From positions 124,001 through 188,000 of the IMG/VR virus record IMGVR_UViG_3300023199_000204: a stretch of DNA of 64,000 nt. One strand, 5' to 3'. Of the stretch, positions 5,144 to 45,076 are shown one piece after another. The position numbers and the translations under genes were made by a program. The notes under the pieces were generated by a model, which worked only from the letters and a program-made list of their open reading frames with translations, ran no database searches and was not told the origin of the DNA. Positions within the stretch are counted from its first letter, which is position 1. Each line of letters opens with the position of its first letter.

Positions 5144-6340
5144 ATGAGTAAAGAATCATTTAAAGATATTTGGTCTTTGAGAAAACCTGGGGCTCGCGAC
5201 TCCGCTCGTCATAAGGAGCGGGTTCGCGAAGCCATCAAGGATAATCTTAGAGATTTGATAGCAGAAGAAAATATTATTACTTCACACGGAAACAAAAAAA
5301 TTAAGGTGCCAATTAAGTATCTTGATATGTGGAGATTTAAGTTTGGAAAAAACAAAAAGTCCAATAGTGTCGGACAAGGTGAAGGAAAAGAACCAGGGGA
5401 TATTATTGCCAAGGAAGGTGGAAAACCTGGGCAAGGAGATAAGGCTGGAGAGCAAGCTGGTGAAGATATTTATGAAGAAGAAGTAGATCTAGATGAAGTA
5501 ATTGAAATAATGTTAGAAGACCTAGATTTACCCTGGCTTGAAGAAAAAGATAAAGCAATAGAAGTAGAAACCGAAGAGATTGTGTTTCAAGATATTGCTG
5601 AAAAAGGCTTGCCTGCGAACATTGATAAGAGAAGAACTATTCTTCAAAATATGAAACGAAACGCTATGAAAGGTAAAATGCGTATTAAGGGAATAGCTCT
5701 CGAAGATTTGAGATATAAGGTTTGGGAAAAAGTCGTTGAAAAGCATTCAAACGCAGCGGTCTTTTTATTAATGGACCGATCTGGAAGTATGGATTCAGAG
5801 AAAAAGTATATTGTTAAATCATTCTTTTTCTGGATGGTTAATTTTATTAGAAGAAAATATAACAATGTAGAAATTGTTTTTATTGCTCACGATACAAGAG
5901 CCAAAGAAGTTGAAGAGGATAAGTTTTTTGAAATTTCTCAGTCTGGAGGAACCAAATGTAGTTCCGCACTACAATTAGCAAAGGATATAATAGAAGAGCG
6001 TTATCCAGATAATATCTGGAATAATTATGTATATTCTTTTTCTGATGGAGATAATTGGAGTGACGATAATTCTATTTGTGTAGATTTAGTTAAAGATCTT
6101 TTGAAAGTGTGCCAGGCGGTTGGTTATGGAGAAGTTCATTACAATAATTGGTTTTACAACTGGTCACAAAATAATCAAGATAGAATAGAGGATTATAAAA
6201 AATCTAAGTTAGCATACTCATATGATTCTAATCTGGATTTAGTTACTAATCCAAGATTTATGATTGGTGTAATCTCAAAAAGAGAGGATATTTACCAATG
6301 CCTTAGAAACTTTTTGAAAGGAGTTAATTCAAATGAATAA
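5144..6340 (+). CDS. yeaH: YeaH/YhbH (DUF444) vWA-domain protein
   Basis: VFLLMDRSGSM MIDAS, FIAHDT, SGGT, SDGDNW; middle gene of the prkA-yeaH-spoVR triad. Confidence 0.9.
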   Translation: MSKESFKDIWSLRKPGARDSARHKERVREAIKDNLRDLIAEENIITSHGNKKIKVPIKYLDMWRFKFGKNKKSNSVGQGEGKEPGDIIAKEGGKPGQGDKAGEQAGEDIYEEEVDLDEVIEIMLEDLDLPWLEEKDKAIEVETEEIVFQDIAEKGLPANIDKRRTILQNMKRNAMKGKMRIKGIALEDLRYKVWEKVVEKHSNAAVFLLMDRSGSMDSEKKYIVKSFFFWMVNFIRRKYNNVEIVFIAHDTRAKEVEEDKFFEISQSGGTKCSSALQLAKDIIEERYPDNIWNNYVYSFSDGDNWSDDNSICVDLVKDLLKVCQAVGYGEVHYNNWFYNWSQNNQDRIEDYKKSKLAYSYDSNLDLVTNPRFMIGVISKREDIYQCLRNFLKGVNSNE

Positions 6341-11768: not shown

Positions 11769-14700
11769 ATGGAACTATCAGCGAGGATTTTGTCGGATAT
11801 TGTTGTTTATATGAAATATGCGAGATTTAAACCGGAACTTGGAAGAAGAGAAACTTGGAAAGAACTTATTACTAGAAATAAAAATATGCACATTAAAAAA
11901 TATCCAAAGCTGGAAGACGAAATAGAGGAGGCATATAAATTAGTTTATGATAGAAAAGTACTACCCTCAATGCGCGGACTCCAATTTGGTGGAAAGCCTA
12001 TTGAAATAAACCCAAGTAGGTTATACAATTGTTGCTATACTCCTATGGATGATTGGAGAGCATTTTCAGAAATAATGTTTTTGCTTTTGGGAGGTTCAGG
12101 GGCAGGTTATTCAGTTCAACATCACCATATAGATAAACTACCAGAAATTAAACGACCAAGGAAAAGGAAAAGAAGATATTTAGTTGGAGACTCAATCGAG
12201 GGATGGGCTGATGCTATTAAAGTTTTGATGAAATCATATTTCTTTGGAATGTCTGATATAGATTTTGATTATTCAGATATTAGGCCGAAGGGAACTAAAC
12301 TAGTGACAGCTGGTGGAAAAGCTCCTGGTCCCCAACCTTTGAAAGATTGTATTCATAACATAAGAAAGGTTTTGGATACTAAAGAAGTTGGTAGCAGGCT
12401 TACTTCTTTAGAAATTCACGACATAAATTGTTTTATTGCTGATGCAGTATTGTCTGGTGGGATTCGAAGATGTTTACCACAAAATACTTTAATTCACACT
12501 AAGAATGGATTAGTAAAGATAAAAAATATTAATGTAGGAGATGAAGTTTTAGTTGGTGTTAATAAGTGGGAAAAAGTATATGCTAAAGAAAATACTGGAA
12601 ATAAAAGTCTTTTGACAATAAAGACACAGTTAGGCAATTTTTTCAGTACTCCAGAGCATCGTTGGGCAGTTTTAAAAAACTTAGAAGGAGAAATTTTTTG
12701 GAAAGAGGCGCAAAATTTGTCTAGTCAAGATAGATTAGTTTTTGTTCCAGATATGTTATCACCAGATAACAATTTAGATTTTCCAGAATGGAAATACATC
12801 CCTCCTAAACACTCTACAATTAGTAAAAATATCAAAATTCCAAAATTTTCTGATAAGTACGCGTGGTATCTTGGGTTTTTACATGGGGATGGTTATGTTT
12901 GTAAGTTTAAAAACCTTTGGAAACAGGTAGTTTTTTCTTGCGCCCCAGATATGCCCAAATCTTATAAAAAGGTAATGGAATTGTCTAAAAATTTCAATGT
13001 AAATCCTAGACCTGTTATGAAAACAGATGGTGCCGATAAAATAGTAATAAAATCTAATCAATTAGCAGAATTTTTAAGTCAATACAAAACATCAAATACA
13101 TCAATAGAAGTTCCTGATATTATTCTTAGGGGAGATTATAAAATTAAATCATCTTATATTGCTGGAATCTTTGATGCTGATGGTAGCGTAAAGTCTAAAA
13201 ATAATAAAAAAGTTATGCCCGCAATAAGTTCTATATATTTTGATTATTTAAGACAACTTAGAGCAGTTTTAGCGAGCTTAAATATTCCAACAAAAATTAG
13301 TATTGTTAGACCAGAAAAAGGTAATTGGAAGACATTATATAAGTTAACTACTGTAGGCCAAGAATCTTTATATAGATTTCATGAACTTATTGGCCCGTAT
13401 TCTGAGAAGTGGCAAAATGATAGTAAAGATTTTTCAAGAAAGTGCGAAAGGAAGTCTTTTACCGTGCCCCCAAAATTATTGAAAGAGTCCCAATATAAGA
13501 ATCTTTTTAATGGAAGTTATTCTTCAGATTCTAGGGTAGAGTTATCATTTTTAAAGTTTGAGAAAGATACGAAAAAAAGAGGATATAAGCCAGTTAAAAT
13601 AGTTGAAGTTATTGATGAAGGTATAAAAACCGAGACATATGATATATCAGTAGAAAATGAATTTTGTTTTGTTGCAGAAGGAATGTTAGTTCACAATTCC
13701 GCTATGATTAGTCTCTTTTCATTTGATGATGAAGATATGATAACTTGTAAATATGGTGCTTGGTGGGAACTAAATCCACAAAGGGCGAGAGCAAATAATT
13801 CAGCTGTAATATTGAGGCATTTAATAAAAGAAGAAGAGTTTTATGACTTTTGGAAAAGAATAGAATTATCTAATTCTGGTGAGCCGGGAATATTCTTTTC
13901 AAATGATATGAACACTGGATCGAATCCATGTATGGAAATATCATTAAAGCCCAACTGTTTTTGTAATTTATGTGAAGTTAATGTAAGTGATGTTGAAAGT
14001 CAGGAAGATTTAAATAAAAGAGTTAGAGCTGCTGCTTTTATAGGGACATTACAGGCAAGCTATACTAATTTTCATTATTTAAGAGATATATGGAAACGAA
14101 CAGCAGAAAAGGAAGCTTTACTTGGAATAGGATTAACTGGTATAGCCAGCAATGCTATTCAAAAATTTGATTTACAAGAATCTGTCAAAATAGGAATGAC
14201 AGAAAACGAGAGGGTGGCTAATTTATTAGGAATTAATAAAGCAGCCCGAGTAACTTGTATTAAGCCTTCTGGGACATCTGCTTTAGTTTTAGGTTGTTCT
14301 AGTGGAATACACGCATATCATTCTAAGTATTATATTCGTAGAATTAGAGTTGGAAAGGATGAGGCCATATATAAATATCTTAAAGAACATCTTCCTAATA
14401 TTATAGAGGATGATTTCCTAAAACCAAAACTACAAGCTGTAATCTCTTTACCAGTTAAAGCACCACAAGGTTCAATTTTAAGAAATGAGTCTGCTCTTTC
14501 TTTGTTAGAAAGAGTAAAAGATTTTCATAACAACTGGATTAGTCCGGGGCACAGAAAGGGACAAAATAAGCACAACATTTCTTGTACTGTTTCTATTAAA
14601 AAAGATGAGTGGAAAACAGTAGGCAAATGGATGTGGGAAAACAGAGAGTTTTATAATGGTCTGTCCGTTTTGCCTTATGACTGTGGTAGCTATACTCAAG

Positions 14701-14849
14701 CACCTCTTGAAGAGTGTAGTGAAATAGAATATTTTAATATGCTTAGTAATTTGGAAAAAATTAATTTAAAAGATATTGTAGAGGGGGAAGATAATACAAT
14801 GTTTAATGAAATCGTTGCTTGTGCGGGCGGAAAATGTGACATTGTATAA
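11769..14849 (+). CDS. nrdJ: Class II (B12-dependent) ribonucleotide reductase, intein-containing; about 617 aa after splicing
   Basis: VLPSMRGL, YNCCY, NPCMEISL, CNLCE, TCIKPSGT, C-terminal ACAGGKC. Confidence 0.93.
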   Translation: MELSARILSDIVVYMKYARFKPELGRRETWKELITRNKNMHIKKYPKLEDEIEEAYKLVYDRKVLPSMRGLQFGGKPIEINPSRLYNCCYTPMDDWRAFSEIMFLLLGGSGAGYSVQHHHIDKLPEIKRPRKRKRRYLVGDSIEGWADAIKVLMKSYFFGMSDIDFDYSDIRPKGTKLVTAGGKAPGPQPLKDCIHNIRKVLDTKEVGSRLTSLEIHDINCFIADAVLSGGIRRCLPQNTLIHTKNGLVKIKNINVGDEVLVGVNKWEKVYAKENTGNKSLLTIKTQLGNFFSTPEHRWAVLKNLEGEIFWKEAQNLSSQDRLVFVPDMLSPDNNLDFPEWKYIPPKHSTISKNIKIPKFSDKYAWYLGFLHGDGYVCKFKNLWKQVVFSCAPDMPKSYKKVMELSKNFNVNPRPVMKTDGADKIVIKSNQLAEFLSQYKTSNTSIEVPDIILRGDYKIKSSYIAGIFDADGSVKSKNNKKVMPAISSIYFDYLRQLRAVLASLNIPTKISIVRPEKGNWKTLYKLTTVGQESLYRFHELIGPYSEKWQNDSKDFSRKCERKSFTVPPKLLKESQYKNLFNGSYSSDSRVELSFLKFEKDTKKRGYKPVKIVEVIDEGIKTETYDISVENEFCFVAEGMLVHNSAMISLFSFDDEDMITCKYGAWWELNPQRARANNSAVILRHLIKEEEFYDFWKRIELSNSGEPGIFFSNDMNTGSNPCMEISLKPNCFCNLCEVNVSDVESQEDLNKRVRAAAFIGTLQASYTNFHYLRDIWKRTAEKEALLGIGLTGIASNAIQKFDLQESVKIGMTENERVANLLGINKAARVTCIKPSGTSALVLGCSSGIHAYHSKYYIRRIRVGKDEAIYKYLKEHLPNIIEDDFLKPKLQAVISLPVKAPQGSILRNESALSLLERVKDFHNNWISPGHRKGQNKHNISCTVSIKKDEWKTVGKWMWENREFYNGLSVLPYDCGSYTQAPLEECSEIEYFNMLSNLEKINLKDIVEGEDNTMFNEIVACAGGKCDIV
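12471..13697 (+). mobile_element. NrdJ intein (409 aa, LAGLIDADG)
   Basis: GGIRR/CLPQNT start, STPEHRW, LGFLHGDG, AGIFDADG, LVHN/S end. Confidence 0.93.
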
Positions 14850-34239: not shown

Positions 34240-34750
34240 CAGCCTCTCAAAACTTTCCTCTCCAGTATATAATCCCCCTCCGTAACGTCTCGAATTTATT
34301 AAGCTTTTTAAACCAATATATTCCCCTCCTAACTTCCCAATATTATTCAATAAATTAACCCACCAAATTAATACAAATAGCTAAATTCCAGCCTCTCAAA
34401 AAAATCAACCAAGCCGGGCTATAAGAATGTGATAAATATCTGTTTTTATTGTTGCTGATCATATAAGTAAATCTAATATAAACCATAAGCATAAAAGCAT
34501 TTCTCTCCTCCCTATCTCTCTTATATCTAATAACTCATAACCTCATTGCCACATATACATTAAGCTATATCTTACCCCTATTCTCTTCCTTTCCCCTAAC
34601 CTATACATATATATACATTATTAATCTTAAGAGCCACTTCTTACTTCTATCTTACTCCTTTCTCTATATATTAAACTTAATCTTAAGCTGTATGTTAAAC
34701 TTAATAGCTACATCTTACCCCTCCTATCCCTTTACATATATATACATAAA
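34240..34750. other. G-depleted non-coding junction, candidate genome end or origin
   Basis: 8 G in 240 nt at 34501-34740; TACATATATATACAT direct repeat at 34604 and 34733. Confidence 0.5.
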
Positions 34751-35210
34751 TTTACCGAACGGGGTGCCCCGGAGCCTCAACTTCAAAAGTTTCCCGCCTG
34801 GGTCCGTACTACATCACCCTACGTGTAAGATAATATCCTACATATAAATAACTCCCTGAAATTATTGATGAAAATATTTTTCCGTTTGAAAAACAATGGA
34901 TCGACGATTATATTAGGTTGAAAGCGGCAAGCTGTGTCGGCATGGCGCAGCAAGGGTGAGCAGGCACAGGGGGCGAGTGGGTGATACACACCTGAGCCCC
35001 CGCAAGAGACCCGAAGGGTCTCTGCTCCCCAAAAAACACAGTGCTGGGCGTTTGATTTATCCAGCACGACGCTTTTAGAAGGTTGAGAGCGTCGGCGTCT
35101 GCGTGGTGTAGGCGTCGTAATCCTGGCGGGATTTCCCGCCGCATACGGAACGGGGCCGGCTTAGGCATAAAGCCCCAAAAGATAGCGGGTAAAACCGCAA
35201 GGAGACTATC

Positions 35211-35720
35211 ATGAGTAAGTTCAGCATTTTCTTGGGAAGGGGAACGCAGATCAGCATCGCGAATACGAAGCTGCGCGAGAGCGTCGTCAGGGCAGCGGAG
35301 GAGCGCAACGTGGGGGAGGAGAAGCTCAAGGCGCAGCTGGATAAGCTGTGCAGCCCGGAGGATCGCGCGGAGTGCCAGTCCGTGTTGGAGGGAGGTGGGT
35401 CCGTGACCACGAGCCTCTACGATCTCAACGACCTTACCCCGGAAGTGCGCAAGAAGGCCGTGGCCTTCTTGCGCCAGCTGGCCAAGCAGGCGGGCAGCAA
35501 GGTTCGCGAAGTGCGGTTCACCGTGACGGCACCGAAGTCCGGAAAAGTCGTAGGTAAGTCGTCCGGCCTCAAGGGCATTCTCAACGCGCCGGTGACCATC
35601 ATGGGCGCCGAGCTTGAGCGCGCTGGCGCCAGCAAGTCGGACGGGCCGAGCGCCTTTGACTCGGCCATCGCCTCGATCCTCGGGTCCGAGGACACCGACA
35701 GCGAGACCGCCGACGCCTAG
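35211..35720 (+). CDS. GC-rich hypothetical protein, first gene after the junction
   Basis: AAGGAG RBS, strong G/C third positions, hairpin after stop. Confidence 0.85.
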   Translation: MSKFSIFLGRGTQISIANTKLRESVVRAAEERNVGEEKLKAQLDKLCSPEDRAECQSVLEGGGSVTTSLYDLNDLTPEVRKKAVAFLRQLAKQAGSKVREVRFTVTAPKSGKVVGKSSGLKGILNAPVTIMGAELERAGASKSDGPSAFDSAIASILGSEDTDSETADA

Positions 35721-36616
35721 ACTCTTCGGGGGCGCAAGCCCCCGACATTCCTACCTTTTTAAAGGGGCGGTCCCATTAACTTGGGGTCGCCCCTTTTCCC
35801 ATTCGAGCGCTAAATGCGTTTCTGCGTGTTCGAGCAAGGGATCGCCCACTGCTACGTCCCTAGACTTGTCTATGTGGGGGCGTATCAAATCTCGACATGT
35901 GCGGACGCATCCGCACCGTTCGACGATTACTGGCTGGTTCGCTAAGTCGACTCAGTCACACCTTTTGCCCGCTTTCCTTAATGGTTTGCGGGCTTTAGGT
36001 GTTCGAAGGGTTTTCTCCCTTCGAACGCAGATCTTAAACTTGCTTTGATGTTTCTTGGGAATAATCTCCCAGAAAGCATCATAACCAGCGTTGCGGTCGT
36101 CACGGCAGCAAAAGCAGGCAAGGGACAGTATGATGCCGCGATTCATCTCGTGGCTAAGTCTCTGGTTTTCCCCGACCACAACTCTTGGGGGAATGAGTGG
36201 AGTACTGCCTTCACTCACGCAACATTGGAGCTAGACTCCAATGATCACGGCAGGTTCTACCGCTAGCTAAGGTTCTTTTTGTTTCTTGGGCACCATAGGT
36301 GCCCTTTAAGCATTCGAGGAGACTTTCTCCAAAAAACAAAAGGGTTTATATCTCTACTTGACTTTAAAACGAGGGTAGGGTTCGTGAACCTAGGAAACTG
36401 TAAGCCTAATTACAGTGGGCGGGGGGCCTCACATTTCATAGTTATTTTTTTGAAAAGGTTCGTGTTAATTCTGGGAGCTATGGCTCCCTATAAGCATTCG
36501 AAAACCCACAAACAAGGAAGCTCCCAGTAGATGAGTTGAAGCGACTACTTAACTCTTAATGTTAATGTTTAGAGGGCACCATAGGTGCCCTTTAGGTATT
36601 CGAGAAAGGTAAAGCA

Positions 36617-36763
36617 ATGACCACTTTTATCACGGGCTTTCTGGTTGTGGGGATTGTATTCATTCAGAACCCAGCGAAATACTTTGATGTATGCGCTGGA
36701 TTCTTTGTGGGTTTGGTTTTCACTTTGATTATGGTTTTGGTTTTTGGAAACCAAAACCGATAA
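36617..36763 (+). CDS. Small membrane protein, 48 aa
   Basis: Read manually; two hydrophobic stretches; lies between two hairpin elements. Confidence 0.6.
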   Translation: MTTFITGFLVVGIVFIQNPAKYFDVCAGFFVGLVFTLIMVLVFGNQNR

Positions 36764-36860
36764 TTTTTTTCTGAAATTTTTTTTTGGAAAAGGGCGTATT
36801 AATCCTTCCAAGGGTTCACGCCCTATAGGTGTTCGAAAACACACAAACAAAGGAGCTATT

Positions 36861-37160
36861 ATGCTCACTCGGAAAGAGAAAGAAGAACTGTTGCGAAGGA
36901 TCCTAACCTTTCGCAAGGGCAAAGTGAACCTTCGGACGCAACGACCGAAAGGTCAGGATCAAGAATCACTGCGTGCGTACTTCGTGTGGCGCATGGCGAG
37001 ATTCCATGGTGGAGAAGATCTGAGCATGCCGATTCAGGCACTTCAGGTCATTGGAGATGACGAAGCGCTCCCCGACTTGAAGGAGATGGCCGACAAGCTG
37101 GCGAAGCGTTTCTTTGGGAGTGACATGCGAGCCGTCAATCGGTTCGAGGGTCTCTTCTAG
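36861..37160 (+). CDS. Hypothetical protein, paralog of 49629-49949
   Basis: AAGGAG RBS; shares MLT...RKG...YFVWR. Confidence 0.8.
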   Translation: MLTRKEKEELLRRILTFRKGKVNLRTQRPKGQDQESLRAYFVWRMARFHGGEDLSMPIQALQVIGDDEALPDLKEMADKLAKRFFGSDMRAVNRFEGLF

Positions 37161-37212
37161 GGGAGACATATACATCGGCAAAACACTTTAAGGGCACTTC
37201 GGTGCCCTTTAG

Positions 37213-37786
37213 GTGTTCGACAATACACAAGCAAAGGTGGCTATAGTGGTTGTCATCCGTCACGAAATTATCAACACCTTAAAGGGAGACTTTGAGGTTT
37301 TCTCGGGAAAGAATCCCGAGCAAGTGGCCTGGATTCTCTCTTACGTTAAGAGAGAGTTTAAGGGGCGACTGTTTCCAGCAACTCCTGGAAATCCTGACGG
37401 CATCGTCAGGAATGACCAGGGCGAGGAAATCGGCCTCTATACCTATGAGGCTCCTCCGTTTCGGCCTCGCAACTCCACGTGGCTATATGTGGAAATTCGG
37501 CTGTGAGCCATAGAGCCTTTACAGGTTTATATACTTTTGCCCACTTTCCTTAATGGTTTGTGAGCTTTAGGTGTTCGAAACCTCATAGTCAAGGAGAGTT
37601 GAAATGACTCAGAACCTGTATCAAATGACTCGTCGCCTCCATCGCAAAAGCCCGCAGCAGCTAAGGGCGTTGCTAAACAAGCTGGCGGTCATCGGTGCGA
37701 CCACGAAGACCAACGTCTCCGGCTACATGAGGGACGTGAGCCACATGATGGCTTGGAAACAAGTGGAGGGGCCGCACAAGCGATAG
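37213..37786 (+). other. Two small hypothetical ORFs (37213-37506, 37604-37786)
   Basis: One ORF per inter-hairpin interval; start of the first is uncertain. Confidence 0.6.
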
Positions 37787-38148
37787 GTCTGCGGGACTTA
37801 AACAAAACACTCACAGGCGCGCGGGATTATTTCCTTAGCGCCTTTGGGTGTTCGAAGAGCAGAGCCGGTTGGTCCCTGGTTCGAATCCTACTTCTCGGCT
37901 TCGAGGAAAAAAAGTTTGAGAAGTATGACTTCGGAATATAAACTTCTTTGATAAAAGGGTCTTCGGACCCTTTAGGTATTCGAAGGGCGTAAAGCTTAAT
38001 TGTTTAACTTGACAACTTAGCTTAACTACTTAACAATTTAATATCTTAATCTTACACCCTTCCTCTTAACTTAATGTTTCTTTTGCCAGTTGAAACTGGC
38101 AGCTAACCTCAACCCAGAGCAAGAATGCTCCAAACCAAGGAAAAAACA

Positions 38149-38511
38149 ATGAGCACGACCACGAACAAAATCATCGAGCAGGCGAAGTCGGCAATAGTGA
38201 ATGGTACGAAGATCGGCGCCAGCGTCAATCTCGGTCGTCAAATCACCAAGCTGGTTCGCGATTTCGCGGGAGCACACTACCCCGAGGCTTTCAACAGCCC
38301 GCTGTTCAAACAGGTGGAGCCGCTTCTGGTGGCTTTCATCGTCCAGGCTGCGACCACGGCATATCCGAATGTGCCGGGAGCGCAGAAGGCGAACAAGGTC
38401 GCTGGACTGGCAATGGTCGGTGAGGCTGCCCTTCTGACCCAGGAGCTGATGTCCAAGGTGGATGTGAGCACGCTGTTCCAGCGAGTGGCTGCTCTCGCTC
38501 CAACGGAGTAA
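38149..38511 (+). CDS. GC-rich hypothetical protein
   Basis: AAGGA RBS, high GC3. Confidence 0.8.
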   Translation: MSTTTNKIIEQAKSAIVNGTKIGASVNLGRQITKLVRDFAGAHYPEAFNSPLFKQVEPLLVAFIVQAATTAYPNVPGAQKANKVAGLAMVGEAALLTQELMSKVDVSTLFQRVAALAPTE

Positions 38512-38522
38512 GCAGGTATAAG

Positions 38523-38558
38523 GCTTCAACGGGGCCGCGGCTCGATGGCCGCGGTGAT
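38523..38558 (-). CRISPR. Solitary 36-nt CRISPR-repeat-like unit, type I-G (I-U)-like; no array
   Basis: Minus strand ATCACCGCGGCCATCGAGCCGCGGCCCCGTTGAAGC: 7-bp stem and TTGAAGC 3' end. Confidence 0.55.
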
Positions 38559-38636
38559 GCTTGTACCTTTCGAGAAACCGCCAGTGCGGTAGGCAGGTAT
38601 AAGAAACAAAAAAAACAACAAACAAAAGGAACTGCT

Positions 38637-39227
38637 ATGTTGAAACTAGGTTTTTCGGAGCTTGTGATTCACAAACGCTTTAACAAGGTCCTTCTCAACA
38701 AACTCAAGAAGTCAGAATACGAGTTCGGTCTTACGGGCTCGTACTTCTTCGGGACCTATCGCCCTGATAGTGACCTTGATCTCTTCGCCAAGGACTCGAA
38801 TGAAGTTCGTAGATTCCTCTACGAATGTAATTTTAATATCGAGTGGGAGGTGAATGGGTATGGGGACAAAAATACTGTCTTATTGTTAAGGCATCACTCC
38901 AATCCTCACATCGATGTTCAGTTGGTGCGGGACACCGCTGCCAAAAAGGATGTGGAGGAGAGGATCAAAAAGGAAACGGGTTGTTGGATCCTCACTCCCC
39001 AATGTGGTGAGACCAAGACCTCTATTTGCTTCAAAAAGCGGCGTGCTACTTTGTATGATATGCTGTATGGGCTGTATGTTTCGGGACACCCCGATTCGCC
39101 TCTTGCGCAGCATATCACAAATCGTTCAGACGTGCTGAACAAGAAGTTGGGTTTGGGTTCGGCACCCAGCGTCGCAGGGAGCAAGAAGGAAACACCAGCA
39201 CTCAAGGGATGGCCTTTCACGTCCTAA
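38637..39227 (+). CDS. Nucleotidyltransferase (pol-beta superfamily, MNT-like)
   Basis: LTGSYFFG...DSDLDL and third Asp in HIDVQ. Confidence 0.8.
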   Translation: MLKLGFSELVIHKRFNKVLLNKLKKSEYEFGLTGSYFFGTYRPDSDLDLFAKDSNEVRRFLYECNFNIEWEVNGYGDKNTVLLLRHHSNPHIDVQLVRDTAAKKDVEERIKKETGCWILTPQCGETKTSICFKKRRATLYDMLYGLYVSGHPDSPLAQHITNRSDVLNKKLGLGSAPSVAGSKKETPALKGWPFTS

Positions 39228-39249
39228 AAACAGGAGATAAAACCATTTT

Positions 39250-39322
39250 GGGCCCATAGCTCAGCGGTTAGAGCGTCGCTCTCATAAAGCGGGGGTCCCT
39301 GGTTCGAATCCAGGTGGGCCCA
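39250..39322 (+). tRNA. tRNA with CAT anticodon (elongator Met or Ile2); no encoded CCA
   Basis: Full cloverleaf, GGGCCCA/TGGGCCC, loop CTCATAA, GGTTCGAATCC. Confidence 0.95.
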
Positions 39323-39572
39323 AAGCAACAATTAATAAAAATAACGAAAGGAGCCAAACAATGCGATAATCTAATATTATTGAAGGAAAACATATATAGT
39401 GTCCTGGGGCTGCCCAACTTTAATAGGTTGGGCAGCCCTTTAGGCATTCGTGAACTTGGCGATATAGGTTAACTTGGTACGCGACAAGAGAATTGCGAAT
39501 TGCGAATTGCGAATTGCTAAGGATCATGGGGAAATTTCCTGGGGGTTTTCCCTGGGACGAAAGGACAGAATC

Positions 39573-39878
39573 ATGAAGACCATGAAGACCATCAGCAAAG
39601 ACATGATCAAAGAGTTGCAGGTCGGCGACGCCGTACTGGTCCTGACCAGCACGGCGCATTACTGGACAGGGAGGATCGTCTCTCTGTCCATGACAGAGAT
39701 CGCCCTCGACGAGGCGGCCTGGATCTCGCAGGTGGGCCGCCACAGCGACTGCGTCGCACGAGGAGACCTGAGTGGGGCTGAGATCGAGCCCCACGCTGAC
39801 GGGCAGATTACCAGGCTGCCTCGGATCGGCAGCGTGGTAGTGGACTGGATCCACGCGTTGCCGCGCGAGCAGCGCTAA
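39573..39878 (+). CDS. GC-rich hypothetical protein (Sm/SH3-like beta protein typical upstream of Ser/Gly-repeat phage genes)
   Basis: HYWTGRI...LDEAAWI...EIEP; AAGGA RBS. Confidence 0.75.
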   Translation: MKTMKTISKDMIKELQVGDAVLVLTSTAHYWTGRIVSLSMTEIALDEAAWISQVGRHSDCVARGDLSGAEIEPHADGQITRLPRIGSVVVDWIHALPREQR

Positions 39879-40270
39879 TGGACGATCTCGCAGGGGAGCT
39901 CGAGCAGCTGATGCGCGCTGGAGACGAGCGCGTGCTCACGGACTACATCGCCGAGCACGCGCTCGAGTGGCTGTGGCTGCCGGCGCCGACCCTTCCGCTG
40001 ATAGCGTGGTCTGGGCGGCTGTCGGGGTCGCGGTCGCGGTCGAGGTCGTGGTCGTGGTCGCTGTCGGGGTTGCGGTCGCGGTCGAGGTCGTGGTCGCTGT
40101 CGGGGTTGCGGTCGCGGTCGAGGTCGAGGTCGCGGTCGCGGTCGAGGTCGTGGTCGGGGTCGGGGTTGCGGTCGCGGTCGAGGTCGTGGTCGAGGTCGTG
40201 GTCGGGGCCGAGGCCGAGGTCGAGGTCGCGGTCGCGGTCGAGGTCGTGGTCGGGGTCGGGCTGGCTCTGA
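39878..40270 (+). CDS. Low-complexity (Ser-Arg/Trp/Gly)n protein
   Basis: TAATG coupling to upstream gene; C-terminal 80 aa of SR/SW/SG dipeptides. Confidence 0.75.
   Translation: MDDLAGELEQLMRAGDERVLTDYIAEHALEWLWLPAPTLPLIAWSGRLSGSRSRSRSWSWSLSGLRSRSRSWSLSGLRSRSRSRSRSRSRSWSGSGLRSRSRSWSRSWSGPRPRSRSRSRSRSWSGSGWL
40022..40261 (+). repeat. Tandem hexamer repeat, mostly TCG-NGG, about 40 units
   Basis: tcgcgg/tcgagg/tcgtgg/tcgggg seen directly. Confidence 0.95.
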
Positions 40271-40343
40271 CGTCGCGCGTGCCGGTATAGATACGATAGG
40301 AGGGGTTATGATTACTTTCGTATTTTTCTGACGGAGGTGAATC

Positions 40344-40478
40344 ATGCGCAAGACTCATAAAAAGATTGGTCCTGGCGGAGTGAAGTGTCCTTGCTGTAAT
40401 CCTTATGGTAAGGACATTAAGAAAAAGCTTAATCGTTGGGAGCGACGCAAGGTAAAACAAGAGCTTAAAACTTATTAG
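40344..40478 (+). CDS. Small basic protein, 44 aa, GPGGVKCPCC motif
   Basis: Read manually; GGAGGTG RBS. Confidence 0.75.
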   Translation: MRKTHKKIGPGGVKCPCCNPYGKDIKKKLNRWERRKVKQELKTY

Positions 40479-40503
40479 CTTATGGGGTGCTGTGAGAGTT
40501 TGG

Positions 40504-40706
40504 AAATGCTGGGAGGTAGGCTTAGAAGCAGCCAGCGGTGTTGAGCAAACCGCATACCTTTAAAGAGTAGCTCATACCCACTCTAGGTGAGTTTGACCGT
40601 GAAGGCTCGCGGAAACCTTGCCGGAGTTTAGGAGTCGGTCTAGAACGACTTTTAATGAAAACCAGGGTTGAGAAAATGCTTTTGGCGTAATAGCACACCA
40701 GTATTT
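40504..40706 (+). ncRNA. Candidate ncRNA mimicking the 23S rRNA L11-binding GTPase-associated centre (H43-H44) with two insertions
   Basis: Collinear blocks GCTGGGAGGTAGGCTTAGAAGCAGCCA / CCTTTAAAGAGT / GCGTAATAGCACACCAGT closed by 9-bp helix 40504-40512:40698-40706. Confidence 0.85.
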
Positions 40707-41150
40707 ATTGGAGTAAAAATCCTAAAGGTCGTTGGTCTTTCTCAAGACTACGACCTTTAGGCATTCGAGGACACTTTAGCGCGTATGGTTGGAAGGTTGG
40801 TATATACATTTAAGTGTTTGACTGTGTTGTGGAGCACCCCCCCCAATGAGATAAGGGACTTCAAGTTCTTTTCCTAAGTGTGTGGGACCGAAAGGTCAAA
40901 AACTAACACAGCGAGATCGGCGGAAGTATCACACGACTCCGCGCGGATCTCCATTTGGCGATAAAAAATAACAGAATAAGGATAAGCCCGGATACTTAAT
41001 TGTATTCGGGCTTTAGGTATTCGAGGAGCTTGTCTCCTAGAAATTGTTAGACCTTGTGAAGACCGCGGGGCGCCACTTCCCCCGGCCGGCAGACACGCCG
41101 GTGTTCTTCCGGCGGAAGAAATAGCGGTTAGCCGCTGAAAGGAAAGGTAC

Positions 41151-41891
41151 ATGCGACTCTCAATCAAGATGTCCAACATCGACGCGCTGTGCGAGGAGCT
41201 ATTGAAGCTCCCAGCCGGTGCACTCTTTCGCCACAACGACGCCGGTGACCTGCCCGCCGCAGGTCGCAGGCAGAAGTTTTTCTTCACTAACCGCGGGCAA
41301 GCCAAGACGGGATACTCGTACCGGACGCGCACGAGTCGCGGTAGTTGCCCGCGGTCGTGCCGTCTCTTCGATATCTGCTACGCTAGCGTTAATCCTCTCC
41401 GATGGTACTGGCAGCAACTCGGACGTTGGTACAAGCGCGGCGCGGAGTATCTCGATCACCGTACCGTGATCAAGCTCGCCAAGGCGGCTTCGCACCTGAC
41501 GGGTTGGACCTACACGCATTGGGACTGGAAGCGCTACTTGCGCACGTTCCTGCGCGGCAACGAGCTCGGGTTCACGATCAACGCGTCGACCGAGAGCCCC
41601 GAAGAGGCACTCGAGGCGTTCCGCGCAGGTCTGCCGGTCACACTCGTCGCTCCGCCCTTCGTGCGCAAGAAGATCATGCTCGAGGACGTGCCCGCCATCC
41701 CTTGTCCCGCGCTCCTGCAAAAGGGCTTCACATGCGACATGTGCGGCAAGGGTTCACCTCTGTGCGCCCGAGCCGACAGGCACTACATCATCCTGTTCCC
41801 CGCGCACGGCGCCAGAGCCCGAGCCGTGTGGAATCGCATCGCGAAGTTCTGGACGGACTTTCTGCCCGAAATGGAGGACGCCTGTGCCTAG
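41151..41891 (+). CDS. GC-rich Cys-rich phage protein (DUF7227/Gp88-like)
   Basis: RHNDAGDL, CPRSC...CYA, WTYTH, GFTINAS, CPA...CDMC...C, FPAHG. Confidence 0.65.
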   Translation: MRLSIKMSNIDALCEELLKLPAGALFRHNDAGDLPAAGRRQKFFFTNRGQAKTGYSYRTRTSRGSCPRSCRLFDICYASVNPLRWYWQQLGRWYKRGAEYLDHRTVIKLAKAASHLTGWTYTHWDWKRYLRTFLRGNELGFTINASTESPEEALEAFRAGLPVTLVAPPFVRKKIMLEDVPAIPCPALLQKGFTCDMCGKGSPLCARADRHYIILFPAHGARARAVWNRIAKFWTDFLPEMEDACA

Positions 41892-42193
41892 AAGAGACGA
41901 CGATGTGGGCTGGGCGGCCATCTAGAGTCTCACCTAAGTCGACGGGTGAAAAAAAATACCGTCCATACAAATCCGACTCATATGTTTCGCCCAAGTTCAA
42001 GTCGCACACTCACACTATGGGGGACATACCATAGGGCTACTGGCTTGCTATAAAGGAAACTAAGACGCTCGCGAGCGCATCTTTCCTTTACAGCAGCCAG
42101 TGGCCTTTTGGTGTTTCGACTGCCTTGGGCAAATGCGCGATAACGCGCGCGATATAGGGTTAAAGAAGTTTTAAATCATCATTATTCGAATAT

Positions 42194-42269
42194 GCACCCG
42201 TATCGGACAGGACTTCTAATCCTGAGCACCGTAATTGGATCGATGCAGGTTCGAGCCCTGCCGGGTGTA
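42194..42269 (+). ncRNA. Non-canonical tRNA-like RNA with Arg(TCT) anticodon hairpin and rearranged D-arm
   Basis: Acceptor GCACCCG/CGGGTGT, CAGGA-CTTCTAA-TCCTG only 7 nt after acceptor, T-arm GCAGG-TTCGAGC-CCTGC. Confidence 0.75.
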
Positions 42270-42331
42270 TTAAAGAAGAAGTTAAAGAGAGCCGAGCACA
42301 CAAAGAAGTTCCATTTACAACGAGGTGAATA

Positions 42332-43598
42332 ATGGAAATCTCCGCGCCAGCATTTATGCAAAAAGGATTGGTCTTTTTGATCGATCTAGGAGCCGACTGT
42401 AAAGAAGAGGTAATCTCTCACGAGATGGGGAGGAGCTTTTGGGGACCTGGTTTTTGGTGGAAGGTGGTAAAGGAGCTACGAAGCAGAGGATACGACATTT
42501 CTCCGGAAGACCTTGGGAGAACCATTGCCAAAATGTACTATGACTTTCGTCCCAACGAGATGATGAATGAGCAAATGGTATCCTATGGATACTCCCAGTG
42601 TTCGAAGTGTGAATTGAGGTATCTTAAACACAAGTTCAAAAGTCACGATCCGTGTGATAATTGCAAAGGTGGTGAATAGAGGTTTCGCAATTTCCGGGAC
42701 TTAGAAAAGGAGAGAATCAAAATGAATAATTTCAAGCGTCTCCGTAAAATCTCGAACACTATCGGCATTTCCCAAGTCAACATGGGAAAGACCGCAGAAG
42801 GGAATGGTCACGTCTCGGTTATTCTGAGAAATGGTCTTTCTATCCGTTCGGAATACGGACAGGGAGACTTTCAGAAAATCTGGTCGGCTATTCACGTATG
42901 GAAGAAGGCACAGGGTCTTCCGTTCTGTTACAACGGCAGTTCGCACGGCTTCGTGTCGCGACTTCGTAAAAAACAGCCGAAGCGAGTAAGAGATGTTTAA
43001 GTCAATTCGGGAGTGGGTTCGCAGAAGGAGAATCAATAAGAAAACAGCGCTGACGGCTTCACGGTTCAAGTGGCTTGGCCTTGAACTTATCAAGGTCTTT
43101 CCCAAGAATCACGATGGGACCGTAAGGATTACCGCGAAGGTCGTCGGCAAGCCAGTGGAATACATCGGAAAGGATTTCAACTTTCAAGGTCGCAAGTATA
43201 TCGTAAAGGATATGGAGTATGGAAAACTCTGTGATAGCATCGTTGGTCTTCGGTGTATAGACATGGGAAGAAATAGATAAGCTTGAAGGGCTTATATGAG
43301 CCCTTTCGGCATTCGAGGAGAAAAAAAGATTATGTTTTCAAACGATGACATTTGGGATTTCCTGAACTTGGAGAGGAATTTTCGCTATGTTGGAGGTCTT
43401 CTTCGTTTTCTAGAAGCACTTCCCGACAAGAAGAACTGTGCCAACCCAAGGGAGCCTGATTGTACGTCAGCTCGCTACATTGGGACTATCATTGTTCGTA
43501 ATGCTTATAATGCTTATAACGCGATGCGAGATGAGGAAAATATGACAAGGGACTGGGGCAACATCATAGATATGGTGTTGGCTTTTAACAACGAATAA
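42332..43598 (+). other. Four small hypothetical ORFs (42332-42679, 42722-43000, 42993-43280, 43332-43598)
   Basis: RBS-preceded open frames. Confidence 0.7.
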
Positions 43599-43787
43599 GG
43601 AGACAAACGATGTCTTTCAACAAAATCAAAAAGGAGTAAGAAATGGGATATATCTGTGCTCCAATTGTTGTGGTATATGTTGCGATTTTGTCAGCTTTGT
43701 GTCAGAAAAAAGAAGTGGACTCAATGAATAGATAGATAGATAGGTTTGCTATCCTTGAACAAACTACCTAATTAAAGGTAATAGAAA

Positions 43788-44024
43788 ATGAATTACGAAA
43801 AATATGAAGTAAGAGTATATACTGATGGAGATAAATATTGGTATCAAGAGGGAAAGCTTCATCGGACCGATGGTCCAGCAGTAGAATTTGCCAATGGAAC
43901 TAAACTTTGGTATATAGAAGGGAAAGAATATACTAAAAAAGAGTTCATTGAACTCTTGAAGAATGACTGTGATGGAAAGACCGTCGAAATCGACGGAAAG
44001 AAATACAAACTAATTCTTCAATAA
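43788..44024 (+). CDS. RTDGPA repeat protein, copy 2 (one unit)
   Basis: Shared MNYEKYEVRVY N-terminus and KTVEIDGKKYKLILQ C-terminus. Confidence 0.88.
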   Translation: MNYEKYEVRVYTDGDKYWYQEGKLHRTDGPAVEFANGTKLWYIEGKEYTKKEFIELLKNDCDGKTVEIDGKKYKLILQ

Positions 44025-44386
44025 GGAAAGACAAATGAGCAACAAAGTTACACCTCAAAAAAAACACATGCAATTCTTCGTTTGTAGTTGCGCGATCAAA
44101 TCAGCAATACTGAAGCGAAAATCGCTCAAATGAGCGAGAAAAAAAAAGCAAGGGTGTGCGAAAAGCCATTCGGCAAAACAAAAGGCAACTGCAAAAATTG
44201 AGAGAGCGCAAGCACGAAGTAGAGCAGCTTCAACGTTATTATGGCGACTAATTAGTAATTAATGGTGGGGGCATCTTAAATAAAGTTCTATAGGCTATCG
44301 GTCTTTTTAGACCCATGGCCTATAGGCATTCGAAAGGGTTTTGGCAATAAAACTCAAACTTGAGAGAAACCAAAAAGGAGAAAGAA

Positions 44387-45076
44387 ATGATTAACTTTGC
44401 CATTTATTCTCATAGCTCTCTGACTTCACTTCCTGTTGCCGATTTTGGTCCGGCGCTTCAAAGGATCAATAATTCTCCCTTTGAGTTCTGGCTCACGGGA
44501 AGTTTTTATTTCGGCAATTACACTATCGATAGCGACTTGGATCTCTACGTTGCTGACGAGAATGCCGTTCATCAGTTCATAATTTCGCTTGGCGGAGTTG
44601 TTCTTAATGGAGTCGCCGGCTATTCTGATTCGAATACCAAGCTCGTTTATAGAATCAAAAACCCAACAATAATGCTTCGGCACATTGACATCCAGATTAG
44701 CAAAGATGTAAAAAGGAAAAAATATCTAGAGCGCAAAATAATGTGTGGTGGTTCACTATACACTACTTTTATAAGTTTGGACAAGGGCGACCGTCGTTCT
44801 TTTTATAACTCCCTATATAGTTTGACTAGTTATAATGAGGAGGAGGAGAAGAAAAAACAACTGCCTTGGTATCATAATGGACAGTATCATCCAGCCGATG
44901 GTCGTCCAATAGCTGAGGGTCTATCTATGAAATCTATCGCATCGCGATCAATTGCCTCTCGCAAAGGTCAAACCATAAAGAAGCAAGATACTTGTACTAA
45001 TTGTGGTTCTCTTGGAGAGGATCTTATCTTCAAGTTCTATTGCTCCAATCCTTCTTGTTCTAACTACAAACCGTAA
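44387..45076 (+). CDS. Nucleotidyltransferase (MNT-like) with C-terminal zinc ribbon; paralog of 38637
   Basis: LTGSFYFG...DSDLDL, HIDIQ; CTNC...CSNPSC. Confidence 0.8.
   Translation: MINFAIYSHSSLTSLPVADFGPALQRINNSPFEFWLTGSFYFGNYTIDSDLDLYVADENAVHQFIISLGGVVLNGVAGYSDSNTKLVYRIKNPTIMLRHIDIQISKDVKRKKYLERKIMCGGSLYTTFISLDKGDRRSFYNSLYSLTSYNEEEEKKKQLPWYHNGQYHPADGRPIAEGLSMKSIASRSIASRKGQTIKKQDTCTNCGSLGEDLIFKFYCSNPSCSNYKP

What the first reader, a model, noticed from the sequence alone, without database searches (positions are those of the whole stretch)
38515..38573. Solitary type I-G-like CRISPR repeat embedded in a hairpin element: candidate RNA anti-CRISPR
Seen: 36-nt ATCACCGCGGCCATCGAGCCGCGGCCCCGTTGAAGC on the minus strand, single copy. 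It is enclosed by an 8-bp GGTATAAG/CTTGTACC stem followed by TTTCGA, and flanked by a GCAGGTATAAG direct repeat (38512, 38593). Known: I-G repeats typically end in (A)TTGAAGC after a GC stem, and phage solitary repeat units can act as Racrs. Caveat: the crRNA sense is antisense to local transcription, so it needs an opposing promoter or acts as an antisense to host pre-crRNA.
Basis: partly seen in the sequence, partly recalled or inferred. Interest (0 to 1): 0.6.

Follow-up and report, generated by a model that had tools for sequence, protein, structure and literature searches.

The report
Solitary type I-G CRISPR repeat in phage
A 316-kb phage from Namib salt-pan mats carries one isolated copy of a type I-G CRISPR repeat, a known kind of candidate RNA decoy against bacterial immunity, but it lies on the strand opposite every gene and nothing shows that it is expressed or active.

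Summary
The 36-nt sequence at 38523-38558 (minus sense) is present once in the 316-kb virus record. It has the anatomy of a type I-G CRISPR repeat: 4 nt, a 7-bp CCGCGGC/GCCGCGG stem, a 6-nt loop, 4 nt and an 8-nt GTTGAAGC handle.

A pattern taken from it found at least 120 bacterial loci, most of them arrays with a ~72-bp period. In 44 of them a Cas4-Cas1 fusion gene lies beside the array on the same strand. Csx17, Csb1 and Csb2 were confirmed in two loci.

It is a divergent member: 37.6 bits against 39.2-56.1 for real repeats. Two near-invariant positions differ. No second repeat lies within 200 nt and no cas gene was found in the record.

It sits in an intergenic gap inside a GC-rich island with GC3 up to 0.86, apparently acquired from a high-GC source.

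The anti-CRISPR (Racr) reading is only partly supported. Type I-G solitary repeats in viruses are already catalogued as Racr candidates. Here the crRNA sense opposes all 321 long ORFs, no sigma-70-like promoter precedes it, the host is unknown, and no RNA data exist.

Verdict: a new member of a known kind, function unproven.

The parts
38523..38558 (-). Solitary type I-G-family CRISPR repeat (SRU), 36 nt. In minus sense: 4 nt, 7-bp stem, 6-nt loop, 7-bp stem, CCCC, 8-nt handle-like GTTGAAGC.
   Evidence: The anatomy matches the I-G repeat described in PMC9638904.
38535..38554 (.). Inner hairpin CCGCGGC-N6-GCCGCGG. The stem arms read the same on both strands. This is the part bound by the Cas6 domain of Csb2 in I-G systems.
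   Evidence: -14.9 kcal/mol in minus sense and -17.5 in plus sense..
38515..38522 (.). 5' arm of the outer stem on the + strand (GGTATAAG).
38560..38567 (.). 3' arm of the outer stem on the + strand (CTTGTACC). It pairs with 38515-38522 with one G-U on + RNA and a C-A mismatch on minus RNA.
   Evidence: The 61-nt fold is -28.2 kcal/mol on + (z -3.2) and -22.4 on minus (z -3.1).
38508..38522 (+). Direct repeat copy 1, GTAAGCAGGTATAAG. It contains the stop codon TAA (38509-38511) of the upstream gene.
38589..38603 (+). Direct repeat copy 2, GTAGGCAGGTATAAG, 81 nt downstream of copy 1. Its TAG (38590-38592) is in frame with the upstream ORF.
   Evidence: and reading.
38577..38590 (.). Small second hairpin ACCGC-CAGT-GCGGT between the SRU and direct repeat copy 2.
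38125..38511 (+). Upstream gene of 128 aa (the public protein collection holds a 120-aa version, corresponding to window 38149-38511). It is an ORFan with GC3 0.71 and ends 11 nt before the SRU.
38637..39227 (+). Downstream gene of 196 aa, a Pol-beta-type nucleotidyltransferase-like protein. Its RBS AAGGA lies 7 nt upstream of the start, and a paralogue lies at 44360-45076.
34240..44000 (+). GC-rich accessory island (47-56% GC in a ~31% GC genome). It holds the SRU, small ORFan genes with GC3 up to 0.86, a DUF7227 gene, tRNA-Met and a tRNA-like sequence.
   Evidence: Contiguity with phage DNA.

Best explanation
The element is a solitary repeat unit (SRU) derived from a type I-G CRISPR array. 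It is a repeat mimic of the kind that phages use as RNA anti-CRISPRs (Racrs).

It sits in a recently acquired, GC-rich accessory island of a huge myovirus from Namib salt-pan mats.

Proposed mechanism, by inference only:
- A short minus-strand transcript starts in the AT-rich 38560-38640 stretch and folds into the 7-bp CCGCGGC/GCCGCGG hairpin.
- The Cas6 domain of the host's Csb2 binds that hairpin. It may cut 4 nt 3' of the stem, leaving GUUGAAGC as a handle.
- Because a proper spacer and second repeat are missing, Csb2 and Cas7g are tied up in dead-end complexes and interference drops.

Shown: homology to I-G repeats, solitariness, intergenic position and hairpin stability.

Inferred: transcription, binding by Csb2, any effect on immunity, and that the host has a type I-G system.
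For: 1. Family membership.
- A pattern from the sequence hits at least 120 genome loci, most of them ~72-bp-period arrays.
- 44 loci carry a Cas4-Cas1 fusion homologue beside the array, always on the strand of ...ATTGAAGC.
- Csx17/Cas8g, Csb1, Csb2, Cas4g/Cas1g and Cas2 were confirmed in L050 and L005.

2. The layout of 36 nt, 7-bp stem, 4 nt and 8-nt handle equals the experimentally mapped I-G repeat. There, Csb2 binds the hairpin with KD about 43-55 nM and cuts 4 nt 3' of the stem (PMC9638904).

3. It is the only positive-scoring site in 316 kb, at 37.6 bits. No partial repeat lies within 200 nt and no cas homologue is in the record.

4. It lies in an intergenic gap, 11 nt after a stop codon and 78 nt before the next start.

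5. I-G SRUs of the same CCGCGGC-stem sub-family are catalogued on viral contigs as Racr candidates. One viral contig, L122, has an internal one.

6. RacrIF1 needs only the stem-loop and the part upstream of it; its handle is dispensable (PMC10651486).

7. The G at handle position 1 is a natural variant. It occurs in the arrays of L132, L002, L007 and L068.

8. In two samples of the source study, other contigs lie on the repeat alone. This suggests that organisms there have a similar repeat. L123, from the same metagenome, carries I-G repeats.
Against: 1. The crRNA sense is on the minus strand. All 321 ORFs of at least 100 aa that look real are on the + strand. The minus-strand ORFs occur almost only in the GC-rich island and look like GC artefacts; GC by codon position was checked for four island ones.

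2. No sigma-70-like promoter lies upstream on the minus strand. My best hand-read candidate matches only 7 of 12 positions.

3. The score falls just below every real array consensus (37.6 against 39.2-56.1). Rfam gives 21.1 bits against 30.2 for a genuine array of the same sub-family.

4. The base 5' of the stem is A, where 70 of 72 arrays have T. Handle position 1 is G, where 69 of 72 have A.

5. The closest array consensus still differs at 5 of 36 positions (L024).

6. The repeat family lives mostly in high-GC bacteria, whereas the phage is 31% GC and uses strong Shine-Dalgarno sites. The host is unknown, and 1977 spacers gave no match.

7. The island looks freshly imported from a high-GC source (GC3 0.7-0.86). 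An intact repeat therefore need not reflect selection in this phage.

8. No related phage was found, so conservation cannot be judged.

9. No HTH/Aca-like or known Acr gene was detected nearby.
Confidence: 0.4

Rival explanations
1. Passenger or relic. The repeat arrived with the GC-rich island from a high-GC phage or bacterium, where it may once have served as a Racr or been part of an array. In this phage it does nothing.
For: - Island genes have GC3 of 0.7-0.86 in a 31% GC genome, so the acquisition is recent.
- DUF7227 homologues occur in phages of Pseudomonas, Curvibacter and Thermus.
- The repeat is on the wrong strand and has no promoter.
- It deviates at two near-invariant positions and scores below all real repeats.
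- The flanking 15-nt direct repeat with duplicated stop codons looks like a recombination scar.
Against: - The stem, spacing and handle are otherwise intact.
- The position is cleanly intergenic.
- Capture of a single CRISPR repeat by a phage without selection is rare.
- The sequence is identical in two samples, although those samples are too close to each other to be informative.
Confidence: 0.3
2. A structural element of the + strand mRNA. The 53-nt extended hairpin (outer stem plus GC inner stem) just after the stop codon protects or processes the 3' end of the upstream message, or weakly terminates it. Its CRISPR-repeat ancestry is incidental.
For: - The + strand is the transcribed strand everywhere.
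- The fold is stronger on +: -28.2 against -22.4 kcal/mol, z -3.2.
- The outer-stem wobble is G-U on + but C-A on minus.
- The element starts 4 nt after the stop codon.
Against: - There is no U-tract (only UUU, then CGAG), and the terminator scan finds nothing here.
- This does not explain the 8-nt handle or the exact I-G spacing.
- A single G-U pair is weak evidence for a strand.
Confidence: 0.12
3. Anti-CRISPR action from the + strand. The mRNA-embedded hairpin keeps the same stem arms and could act as a Csb2 decoy. Alternatively, the 36-nt anti-repeat pairs with host pre-crRNA repeats and blocks their processing or triggers their cleavage.
For: - The stem arms are identical on both strands, and the loop is unconserved in the family.
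- Csb2 binds the hairpin and not the handle.
- The RacrIF1 handle can be replaced by its reverse complement.
- Expression on the + strand is the default here.
Against: - There is no precedent for this in type I systems.
- On + RNA the inner hairpin is locked into a longer helix.
- The conserved flanks (U 5' of the stem; CC(C/U)C 3' of it) are absent on +.
- The repeat is at best about 86% identical to any known array.
Confidence: 0.08
4. Remnant of a phage-borne mini-array or crRNA-like regulatory RNA: a repeat plus a spacer-sized segment that guides host Cas proteins.
For: - The 81-nt unit between the direct repeats equals 15 + 36 + 30 nt, close to a repeat-spacer period.
- Huge phages and viral crlRNAs are known to use mini-arrays (abstract of 10.1101/2024.10.29.618823).
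Against: - No second repeat, even a degenerate one, lies within 200 nt on either strand.
- The spacer-sized part has no match in viral contigs.
- The sequence downstream of the repeat is the phage's own gene end.
Confidence: 0.05
5. Chance resemblance of an ordinary GC-rich palindrome to a CRISPR repeat.
For: The Rfam hit alone is not significant (E 0.65 over 13 kb).
Against: - All 23 fixed positions of the family pattern match.
- The score is 37.6 bits against a maximum of -0.7 in 3 Mb of random sequence.
- The spacing is exactly 4-7-6-7-4-8.
Confidence: 0.01

Closest known systems
Solitary repeat units / RNA anti-CRISPRs (Racrs): Faure et al. 2019; Camara-Wilpert et al. 2023, PMC10651486
   Same: - It is a single CRISPR-repeat mimic with no partner repeat and no cas genes nearby.
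- It is intergenic and sits on a virus.
- The hairpin that the Cas6-type nuclease binds is intact.
- That paper's supplementary table already lists I-G SRUs on IMG/VR contigs, including one with the same CCGCGGC stem and ...CATTGAAGC tail.
   Different: - No predicted promoter lies upstream.
- The sense strand opposes all neighbouring genes, whereas the viral I-G SRU in L122 points the same way as its neighbours.
- It is more diverged from known repeats (31 of 36 at best).
- It is wrapped in an extra 8-bp outer stem and flanked by a 15-nt direct repeat.
- The host and its CRISPR subtype are unknown.
- In the main text I read, the systems named as tested were I-F, I-E, I-C and V-A; I-G is not mentioned there.
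Type I-G CRISPR repeats (Rfam RF01330 CRISPR-DR16; Thioalkalivibrio sulfidiphilus system, PMC9638904)
   Same: - It is 36 nt long with a 7-bp GC stem.
- It has 4 nt between the stem and an 8-nt handle ending TTGAAGC.
- The stem arms are identical to those of many arrays that lie next to csx17-csb1-csb2-cas4/1-cas2.
   Different: - It is a single copy with no spacers and no cas genes.
- It has A instead of the near-invariant T 5' of the stem, and G instead of A at handle position 1.
- It scores below the Rfam gathering threshold.
Viral mini-arrays and crRNA-like regulatory RNAs (crlRNA/CreA type)
   Same: It is a repeat-derived RNA element on a phage with an adjacent spacer-sized segment.
   Different: These need two (often degenerate) repeats flanking a pseudo-spacer, and no second repeat is present here.
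Intergenic mRNA hairpins and intrinsic terminators of phages
   Same: It is a stable GC-rich hairpin directly after a stop codon on the transcribed strand.
   Different: It has no U-tract, and its sequence is homologous to a CRISPR repeat rather than being generic.

Membership tests
Type I-G CRISPR repeat (sequence family) | 36-37 nt unit with a 7-bp CCG[C/G]GGC / GCC[C/G]CGG stem and a 6-nt loop | tested here: met
Type I-G CRISPR repeat (sequence family) | 4 nt after the stem, then an 8-nt handle (A)TTGAAGC at the 3' end | tested here: met
   The element has CCCC + GTTGAAGC. The first handle base is G, where 69 of 72 arrays have A; G also occurs in real arrays. The cleavage geometry is from PMC9638904.
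Type I-G CRISPR repeat (sequence family) | T immediately 5' of the stem (70 of 72 array consensus repeats) | tested here: not met
   The element has A at this position.
Type I-G CRISPR repeat (sequence family) | Reaches the gathering score of Rfam CRISPR-DR16 (35 bits) | tested here: not met
   It scores 21.1 bits. The genuine CCGCGGC-stem array L132 also fails at 30.2 bits, so the model is narrow.
CRISPR array | Two or more repeats separated by spacers, usually next to cas genes | tested here: not met
   There is a single copy in 316 kb, no CRISPR-like periodic repeats, no partial repeat within 200 nt and no cas homologues.
Solitary repeat unit (SRU) as defined by SRUFinder | A full-length match to a known repeat that is intergenic and has no full or partial repeat within 100 bp | tested here: met
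Solitary repeat unit (SRU) as defined by SRUFinder | BLAST bit score of at least 41.1 to a repeat in the reference set of 17,823 repeats | not tested
   That repeat database is not on hand. The best identity to the arrays fetched here is 31 of 36, which may fall short of the threshold.
Racr (functional RNA anti-CRISPR) | Expressed as a small RNA from its own promoter | tested here: inconclusive
   No sigma-70-like site lies on the minus strand, but the phage's or host's promoter types are unknown. No RNA runs hold the locus.
Racr (functional RNA anti-CRISPR) | The host carries the cognate CRISPR-Cas subtype with a similar repeat | not testable with these tools
   The host is unknown: there are no close relatives among cultured phages and no spacer match. 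There are only hints that similar repeats occur in the same mats.
Racr (functional RNA anti-CRISPR) | Binds the Cas6-type nuclease and backbone subunits and lowers interference | not testable with these tools
   This needs biochemistry and interference assays.
Intrinsic terminator | GC-rich hairpin followed by a run of U | tested here: not met
   The scan finds none at this site. The tail reads UUUCGAG.

The most novel reading that the evidence does not exclude
The phage carries the I-G repeat in antisense on purpose, inside the 3' untranslated hairpin of an mRNA. The + strand RNA would then act either as an anti-repeat or as an mRNA-embedded Csb2 decoy. As an anti-repeat it would pair with host pre-crRNA repeats and block or misdirect their processing. 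As a decoy it would work because its stem arms are the same on both strands. Either would be a mode of RNA anti-CRISPR not yet described for type I systems.
Probability: 0.07. Interest if true: 0.8.

Novelty: new member of a known kind. Interest (0 to 1): 0.4.

Why it matters
In the papers I searched and read here I found no inhibitor of type I-G CRISPR-Cas that has been tested, whether protein or RNA. I-G is the least studied type I subtype and is being adopted for genome engineering. A working I-G Racr would give an off-switch and a probe of Csb2-centred assembly.

The locus also shows a huge, low-GC phage importing a block of high-GC accessory genes together with a CRISPR-repeat mimic. That bears on how counter-defence elements move between unrelated phages.

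If the element is inert, it serves as a caution: repeat mimics found by sequence alone can be passengers.

Tried and rejected
- **Relatives of the island or phage.** I found none by megablast or blastn against phage records, and none by searching viral contigs with the two flanking proteins. A word search with the upstream protein returned only itself.
- **Exact sub-family pattern and spacer-sized flank in viral contigs.** Both gave nothing.
- **Host link through spacers.** The 1977 spacers from the fetched I-G arrays gave only chance matches of at most 17 nt.
- **Host through phage relatives.** Tail sheath, PhoH and PrkA-like proteins have only distant hits (below 40% identity) to phages of many phyla.
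- **Second degenerate repeat (mini-array).** No alignment exceeded shuffled controls.
- **Phage-borne CRISPR-Cas.** There are no arrays and no cas homologues.
- **Recurrent promoter or boundary motif.** GTARGCAGGTATAAG is not recurrent. k-mer enrichment in intergenic regions gave only Shine-Dalgarno and tRNA motifs.
- **Aca/HTH or known domains in neighbouring small ORFs.** None was found.
- **Orientation of other solitary I-G repeats relative to their genes.** My GC3-based heuristic gave mixed, unreliable results, so I did not use it.
- **Assembly chimera as the origin of the island.** I rejected this. An independent contig spans the left junction, and the JGI contig includes phage-type sequence at both ends.
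- **Not used.** I did not run the large representative protein search or structure prediction, because the claim does not rest on them.

Full report
**Where the window lies.** The window is bases 124001-188000 of a single 316,473-bp virus record. The record is about 31% GC. It encodes a tail sheath, a baseplate wedge protein, a DnaB-like helicase, PhoH, a ribonucleotide reductase and several tRNAs, so it is a huge myovirus.

Identical DNA occurs in two samples of one study: JGI metagenome 3300022725 and runs SRR23862440 and SRR23862445. The paper that lists those accessions describes Namib Desert salt-pan microbial mats and halites. No cultured phage is close. Every one of the 321 ORFs of at least 100 aa that looks real lies on the + strand.

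**The observation.** The 36-mer is at + strand 38523-38558 and is unique in the record. Read on the minus strand it has six parts:
- 4 nt (ATCA)
- CCGCGGC
- a 6-nt loop
- GCCGCGG
- CCCC
- GTTGAAGC

The direct repeat is really 15 nt, GTA[A/G]GCAGGTATAAG, at 38508-38522 and 38589-38603. Each copy contains a stop codon (TAA, TAG). The two stops are 81 nt apart in the frame of the upstream ORF, with no stop between them (my reading). The motif does not recur elsewhere in the window beyond chance.

**Is it a CRISPR repeat?** An E-value scan of Rfam gave one relevant hit. CRISPR-DR16 matched over its full length on the minus strand at 21.1 bits, below the gathering score of 35. The alignment shows the same stem, with a compensatory G-C to C-G swap, the same CC after the stem and the same UUGAA core.

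I then wrote a degenerate pattern covering both sequences and scanned one genome per prokaryote species.
Most are arrays with a period of about 72 bp, in Planctomycetota, Proteobacteria, Acidobacteriota, Gemmatimonadota and other phyla.
- In L050 and L005 the genes next to the array are csx17/cas8g (found in L050 only), csb1/cas7g, csb2, the cas4g-cas1g fusion and cas2. That is a type I-G operon.
- Across the fetched loci, 44 have a Cas4-Cas1 fusion homologue beside the array. In all 44 the repeat points the same way as the gene.
- Rfam DR16 hits the L050 array above threshold. It scores the genuine CCGCGGC-stem array of L132 at only 30.2 bits and the viral solitary repeat of L122 at 30.5. The Rfam model is therefore narrow, and a sub-threshold score does not exclude membership.

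The published biochemistry of a type I-G system describes a 36-nt repeat with a 7-bp stem. Csb2 cleaves 4 nt 3' of the stem to leave an 8-nt handle, and its Cas6 domain binds tightly to the hairpin but not to the handle (PMC9638904). The element has this geometry exactly.

**How good a member is it?** A position-weight matrix from 72 distinct array consensus repeats gives the element 37.6 bits.
- Real repeats, scored leave-one-out, range from 39.2 to 56.1 bits, with a median of 51.8.
- No other site in the 316-kb genome scores above zero.
- The maximum in 3 Mb of random sequence with the island's composition is -0.7.

One caveat applies. The training repeats were collected with a pattern that shares its fixed positions with the element, so only the free positions are an unbiased test. 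At those positions the element agrees with the invariant G two bases from the 3' end. It departs at two near-invariant sites:
- The base 5' of the stem is T in 70 of 72 arrays and A here.
- The first handle base is A in 69 of 72 arrays and G here.

The G variant is natural. It occurs throughout the arrays of L132, L002, L007 and L068, and as single variant repeats within other arrays. The nearest array consensus, L024, differs at 5 of 36 positions. The element is therefore homologous to I-G repeats but sits at the divergent edge of the family.

**Is it solitary?** Yes.
- Local alignment of the repeat against 200 nt on each side, on both strands, does not exceed shuffled controls.
- The genome has no CRISPR-like periodic repeats. 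The 69-bp periodicities that do occur probably lie in coding repeats.
- Neither tblastn with I-G Cas proteins nor the Csb2 HMM finds anything. The record may be a fragment of a larger genome.

**Context.** The element lies in the 125-nt gap between a 128-aa ORFan (38125-38511) and a 196-aa nucleotidyltransferase-like gene (38637-39227). The ORFan has no homologue by family scans or word search. The second gene has a good AAGGA ribosome-binding site and a paralogue at 44360-45076. tRNA-Met follows at 39249-39323.

All of this sits in the only GC-rich island of the genome, roughly 34240-44000, at 47-56% GC.
- The + strand ORFs in the island show the coding signature GC3 > GC1 > GC2, with GC3 of 0.71-0.86 for several. 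The long minus-strand ORFs there do not, and their translations look like noise.
- The DUF7227 gene in the island has homologues in phages of Pseudomonas, Curvibacter and Thermus.
- The island is not an assembly artefact. A 6.2-kb contig from an independent assembly spans its left junction. The 9.8-kb JGI contig carries phage-type sequence at its ends and breaks inside repeated gene families.

The simplest reading is a recent import of accessory genes from a phage or element of high-GC bacteria, the same kind of organisms that carry this repeat family.

**Strand, promoter and structure.** The crRNA sense is antisense to everything around it. The consensus scan finds no sigma-70-like promoter on the minus strand between 38560 and 38800, and no terminator-like site at the element on either strand. 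By hand, the best minus-strand candidate is TTGTTT, an 18-nt spacer and TATACC, which matches only 7 of 12 positions. This is my own reading and is weak.

k-mer enrichment in 196 intergenic gaps reveals only Shine-Dalgarno and tRNA motifs, so no phage promoter motif is available for comparison.

The 61-nt stretch folds stably on both strands:
- + strand: -28.2 kcal/mol, z -3.2.
- minus strand: -22.4 kcal/mol, z -3.1.

The + strand gains from G-U pairs, including the one in the outer stem. Because the inner stem is a perfect helix, its arms read identically on both RNAs. Only the loop, which is unconserved in the family, and the flanks differ.

**What is known about such elements.** Solitary repeat units in viruses were shown to act as RNA anti-CRISPRs.
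- RacrIF1 is bound and cut by Cas6f and, together with Cas7f, forms an aberrant subcomplex.
- Its activity needs the stem-loop and the RNA upstream of the cut. It tolerates replacement of the handle by its reverse complement.
- 2,103 viral SRUs were found, covering all CRISPR types except type VI.
- 83% of prophage SRUs match the CRISPR subtype of their host (PMC10651486).

The supplementary table of that paper lists I-G SRUs on IMG/VR contigs. One has the same CCGCGGC stem and a CATTGAAGC tail.

My own scans found three viral contigs with repeats of this family. In L122 the repeat is internal, lies 10-15 nt after a stop codon, and points the same way as its flanking genes. Several metagenome and genome contigs also carry apparently solitary copies. 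The kind is therefore known, and this element would be one more member.

**Weighing the explanations.**

In favour of a Racr:
- clear homology to I-G repeats;
- intact Csb2-type geometry;
- a solitary, intergenic position on a phage;
- precedent for this sub-family on viruses;
- the rarity of repeat capture without selection.

Against a Racr:
- the strand;
- the lack of a recognisable promoter;
- the two deviant conserved positions;
- a score below every real array;
- a low-GC phage with an unknown host, and no spacer link among 1977 spacers;
- no relatives in which to judge conservation;
- the evident recency of the island, which removes the argument that intactness implies selection.

A hint in favour is that other contigs in two samples of the same study lie on the repeat alone, with unlike sequence beside it. 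That is what CRISPR arrays of co-resident organisms would give. L123, a 61% GC viral contig with I-G repeats, comes from the same metagenome. I could not retrieve those other contigs.

My estimates are:

| Explanation | Confidence |
|---|---|
| Racr-type function from the minus strand | 0.40 |
| Inert passenger or relic | 0.30 |
| + strand mRNA hairpin with no CRISPR role | 0.12 |
| + strand decoy or anti-repeat | 0.08 |
| Mini-array remnant | 0.05 |
| Chance | 0.01 |

**Unexplained.** The 15-nt direct repeat brackets 66 nt: the 36-nt repeat plus 30 nt. It duplicates a stop codon in frame. This looks like a recombination or insertion scar. No other solitary I-G repeat that I examined has such flanks, and I have no mechanism to offer for it.

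**Verdict.** The anti-CRISPR interpretation is plausible but unproven, and the strand problem weakens it. The element is a new member of a known kind. Its interest is moderate and would rise sharply if the antisense arrangement proved functional.

The costly representative protein search was not used.

Noticed in passing
window 34240-44000: This is the only GC-rich island (47-56% GC) in a ~31% GC, 316-kb phage. It has a sharp left edge near 34240-34900 and GC declines gradually to the right. Its + strand genes have GC3 up to 0.86, which suggests recent import from a high-GC source.
   Followed up: partly
window 34240-35210: This is about 1 kb without ORFs at the left edge of the island. A pyrimidine-rich, low-complexity stretch (34240-34870) is followed by a GC-rich stretch with several hairpins (34900-35200), directly upstream of the strong RBS of ORF 35211-35720. 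Rfam finds nothing there.
   Followed up: no
window 38509-38592: The stop TAA of the upstream ORF is followed by 26 open codons and an in-frame TAG. Both stops lie inside the two copies of the 15-nt direct repeat. A read-through would add 27 residues that are encoded partly by the CRISPR repeat.
   Followed up: no
window 39878-40270 (repeats about 40026-40200): There is a GC-rich tandem repeat (GGTCGC-type units; periods of 42-102 nt detected) inside an ORF. It reads as an RS-rich protein on the + strand and as PRP-rich or VAV-rich in other frames.
   Followed up: no
window 38637-39227 and 44360-45076: Two paralogous Pol-beta-type nucleotidyltransferase-like genes (GS...DSDLDL motif) have different GC3 values (0.57 and 0.39). 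Each lies near tRNA genes.
   Followed up: no
window 42194-42269: Rfam finds a tRNA-like sequence here (39.8 bits), but ARAGORN does not call it.
   Followed up: no
window 1925-5134, 6333-10208, 11769-14849: These are very large ORFs. Their matches to PrkA-like kinase/ATPase and ribonucleotide reductase families cover only part of each protein or come in two pieces. Endonuclease-like hits lie between the pieces, so inserted domains such as inteins are possible.
   Followed up: no
whole record; window examples 10361, 46900, 48583, 50435: There are many 69-bp-period tandem repeats (23-residue units, MORN-like, as in ORF 43788-44024). They probably explain the breaks in independent assemblies.
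   Followed up: no
whole record: All ORFs that look real are on one strand across 316 kb. Intergenic k-mers show strong AAGGAG-type Shine-Dalgarno sites, which suggests a host that relies on Shine-Dalgarno initiation (my inference).
   Followed up: partly
loci L003, L028, L030, L036, L040, L058, L071, L087, L116, L124/L125/L130, L127: Apparently solitary type I-G repeats also occur in bacterial genome and metagenome contigs, with no other family repeat in the fetched stretch. Whether they lie in prophages or are array remnants was not determined.
   Followed up: partly
window 38521-38560, runs X2 and X3: Extra low-depth contigs from two samples of the same study lie on the repeat only, with unlike sequence before 38521. 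They are probably CRISPR arrays of other mat organisms with a repeat at least 85% alike. They could not be retrieved.
   Followed up: no
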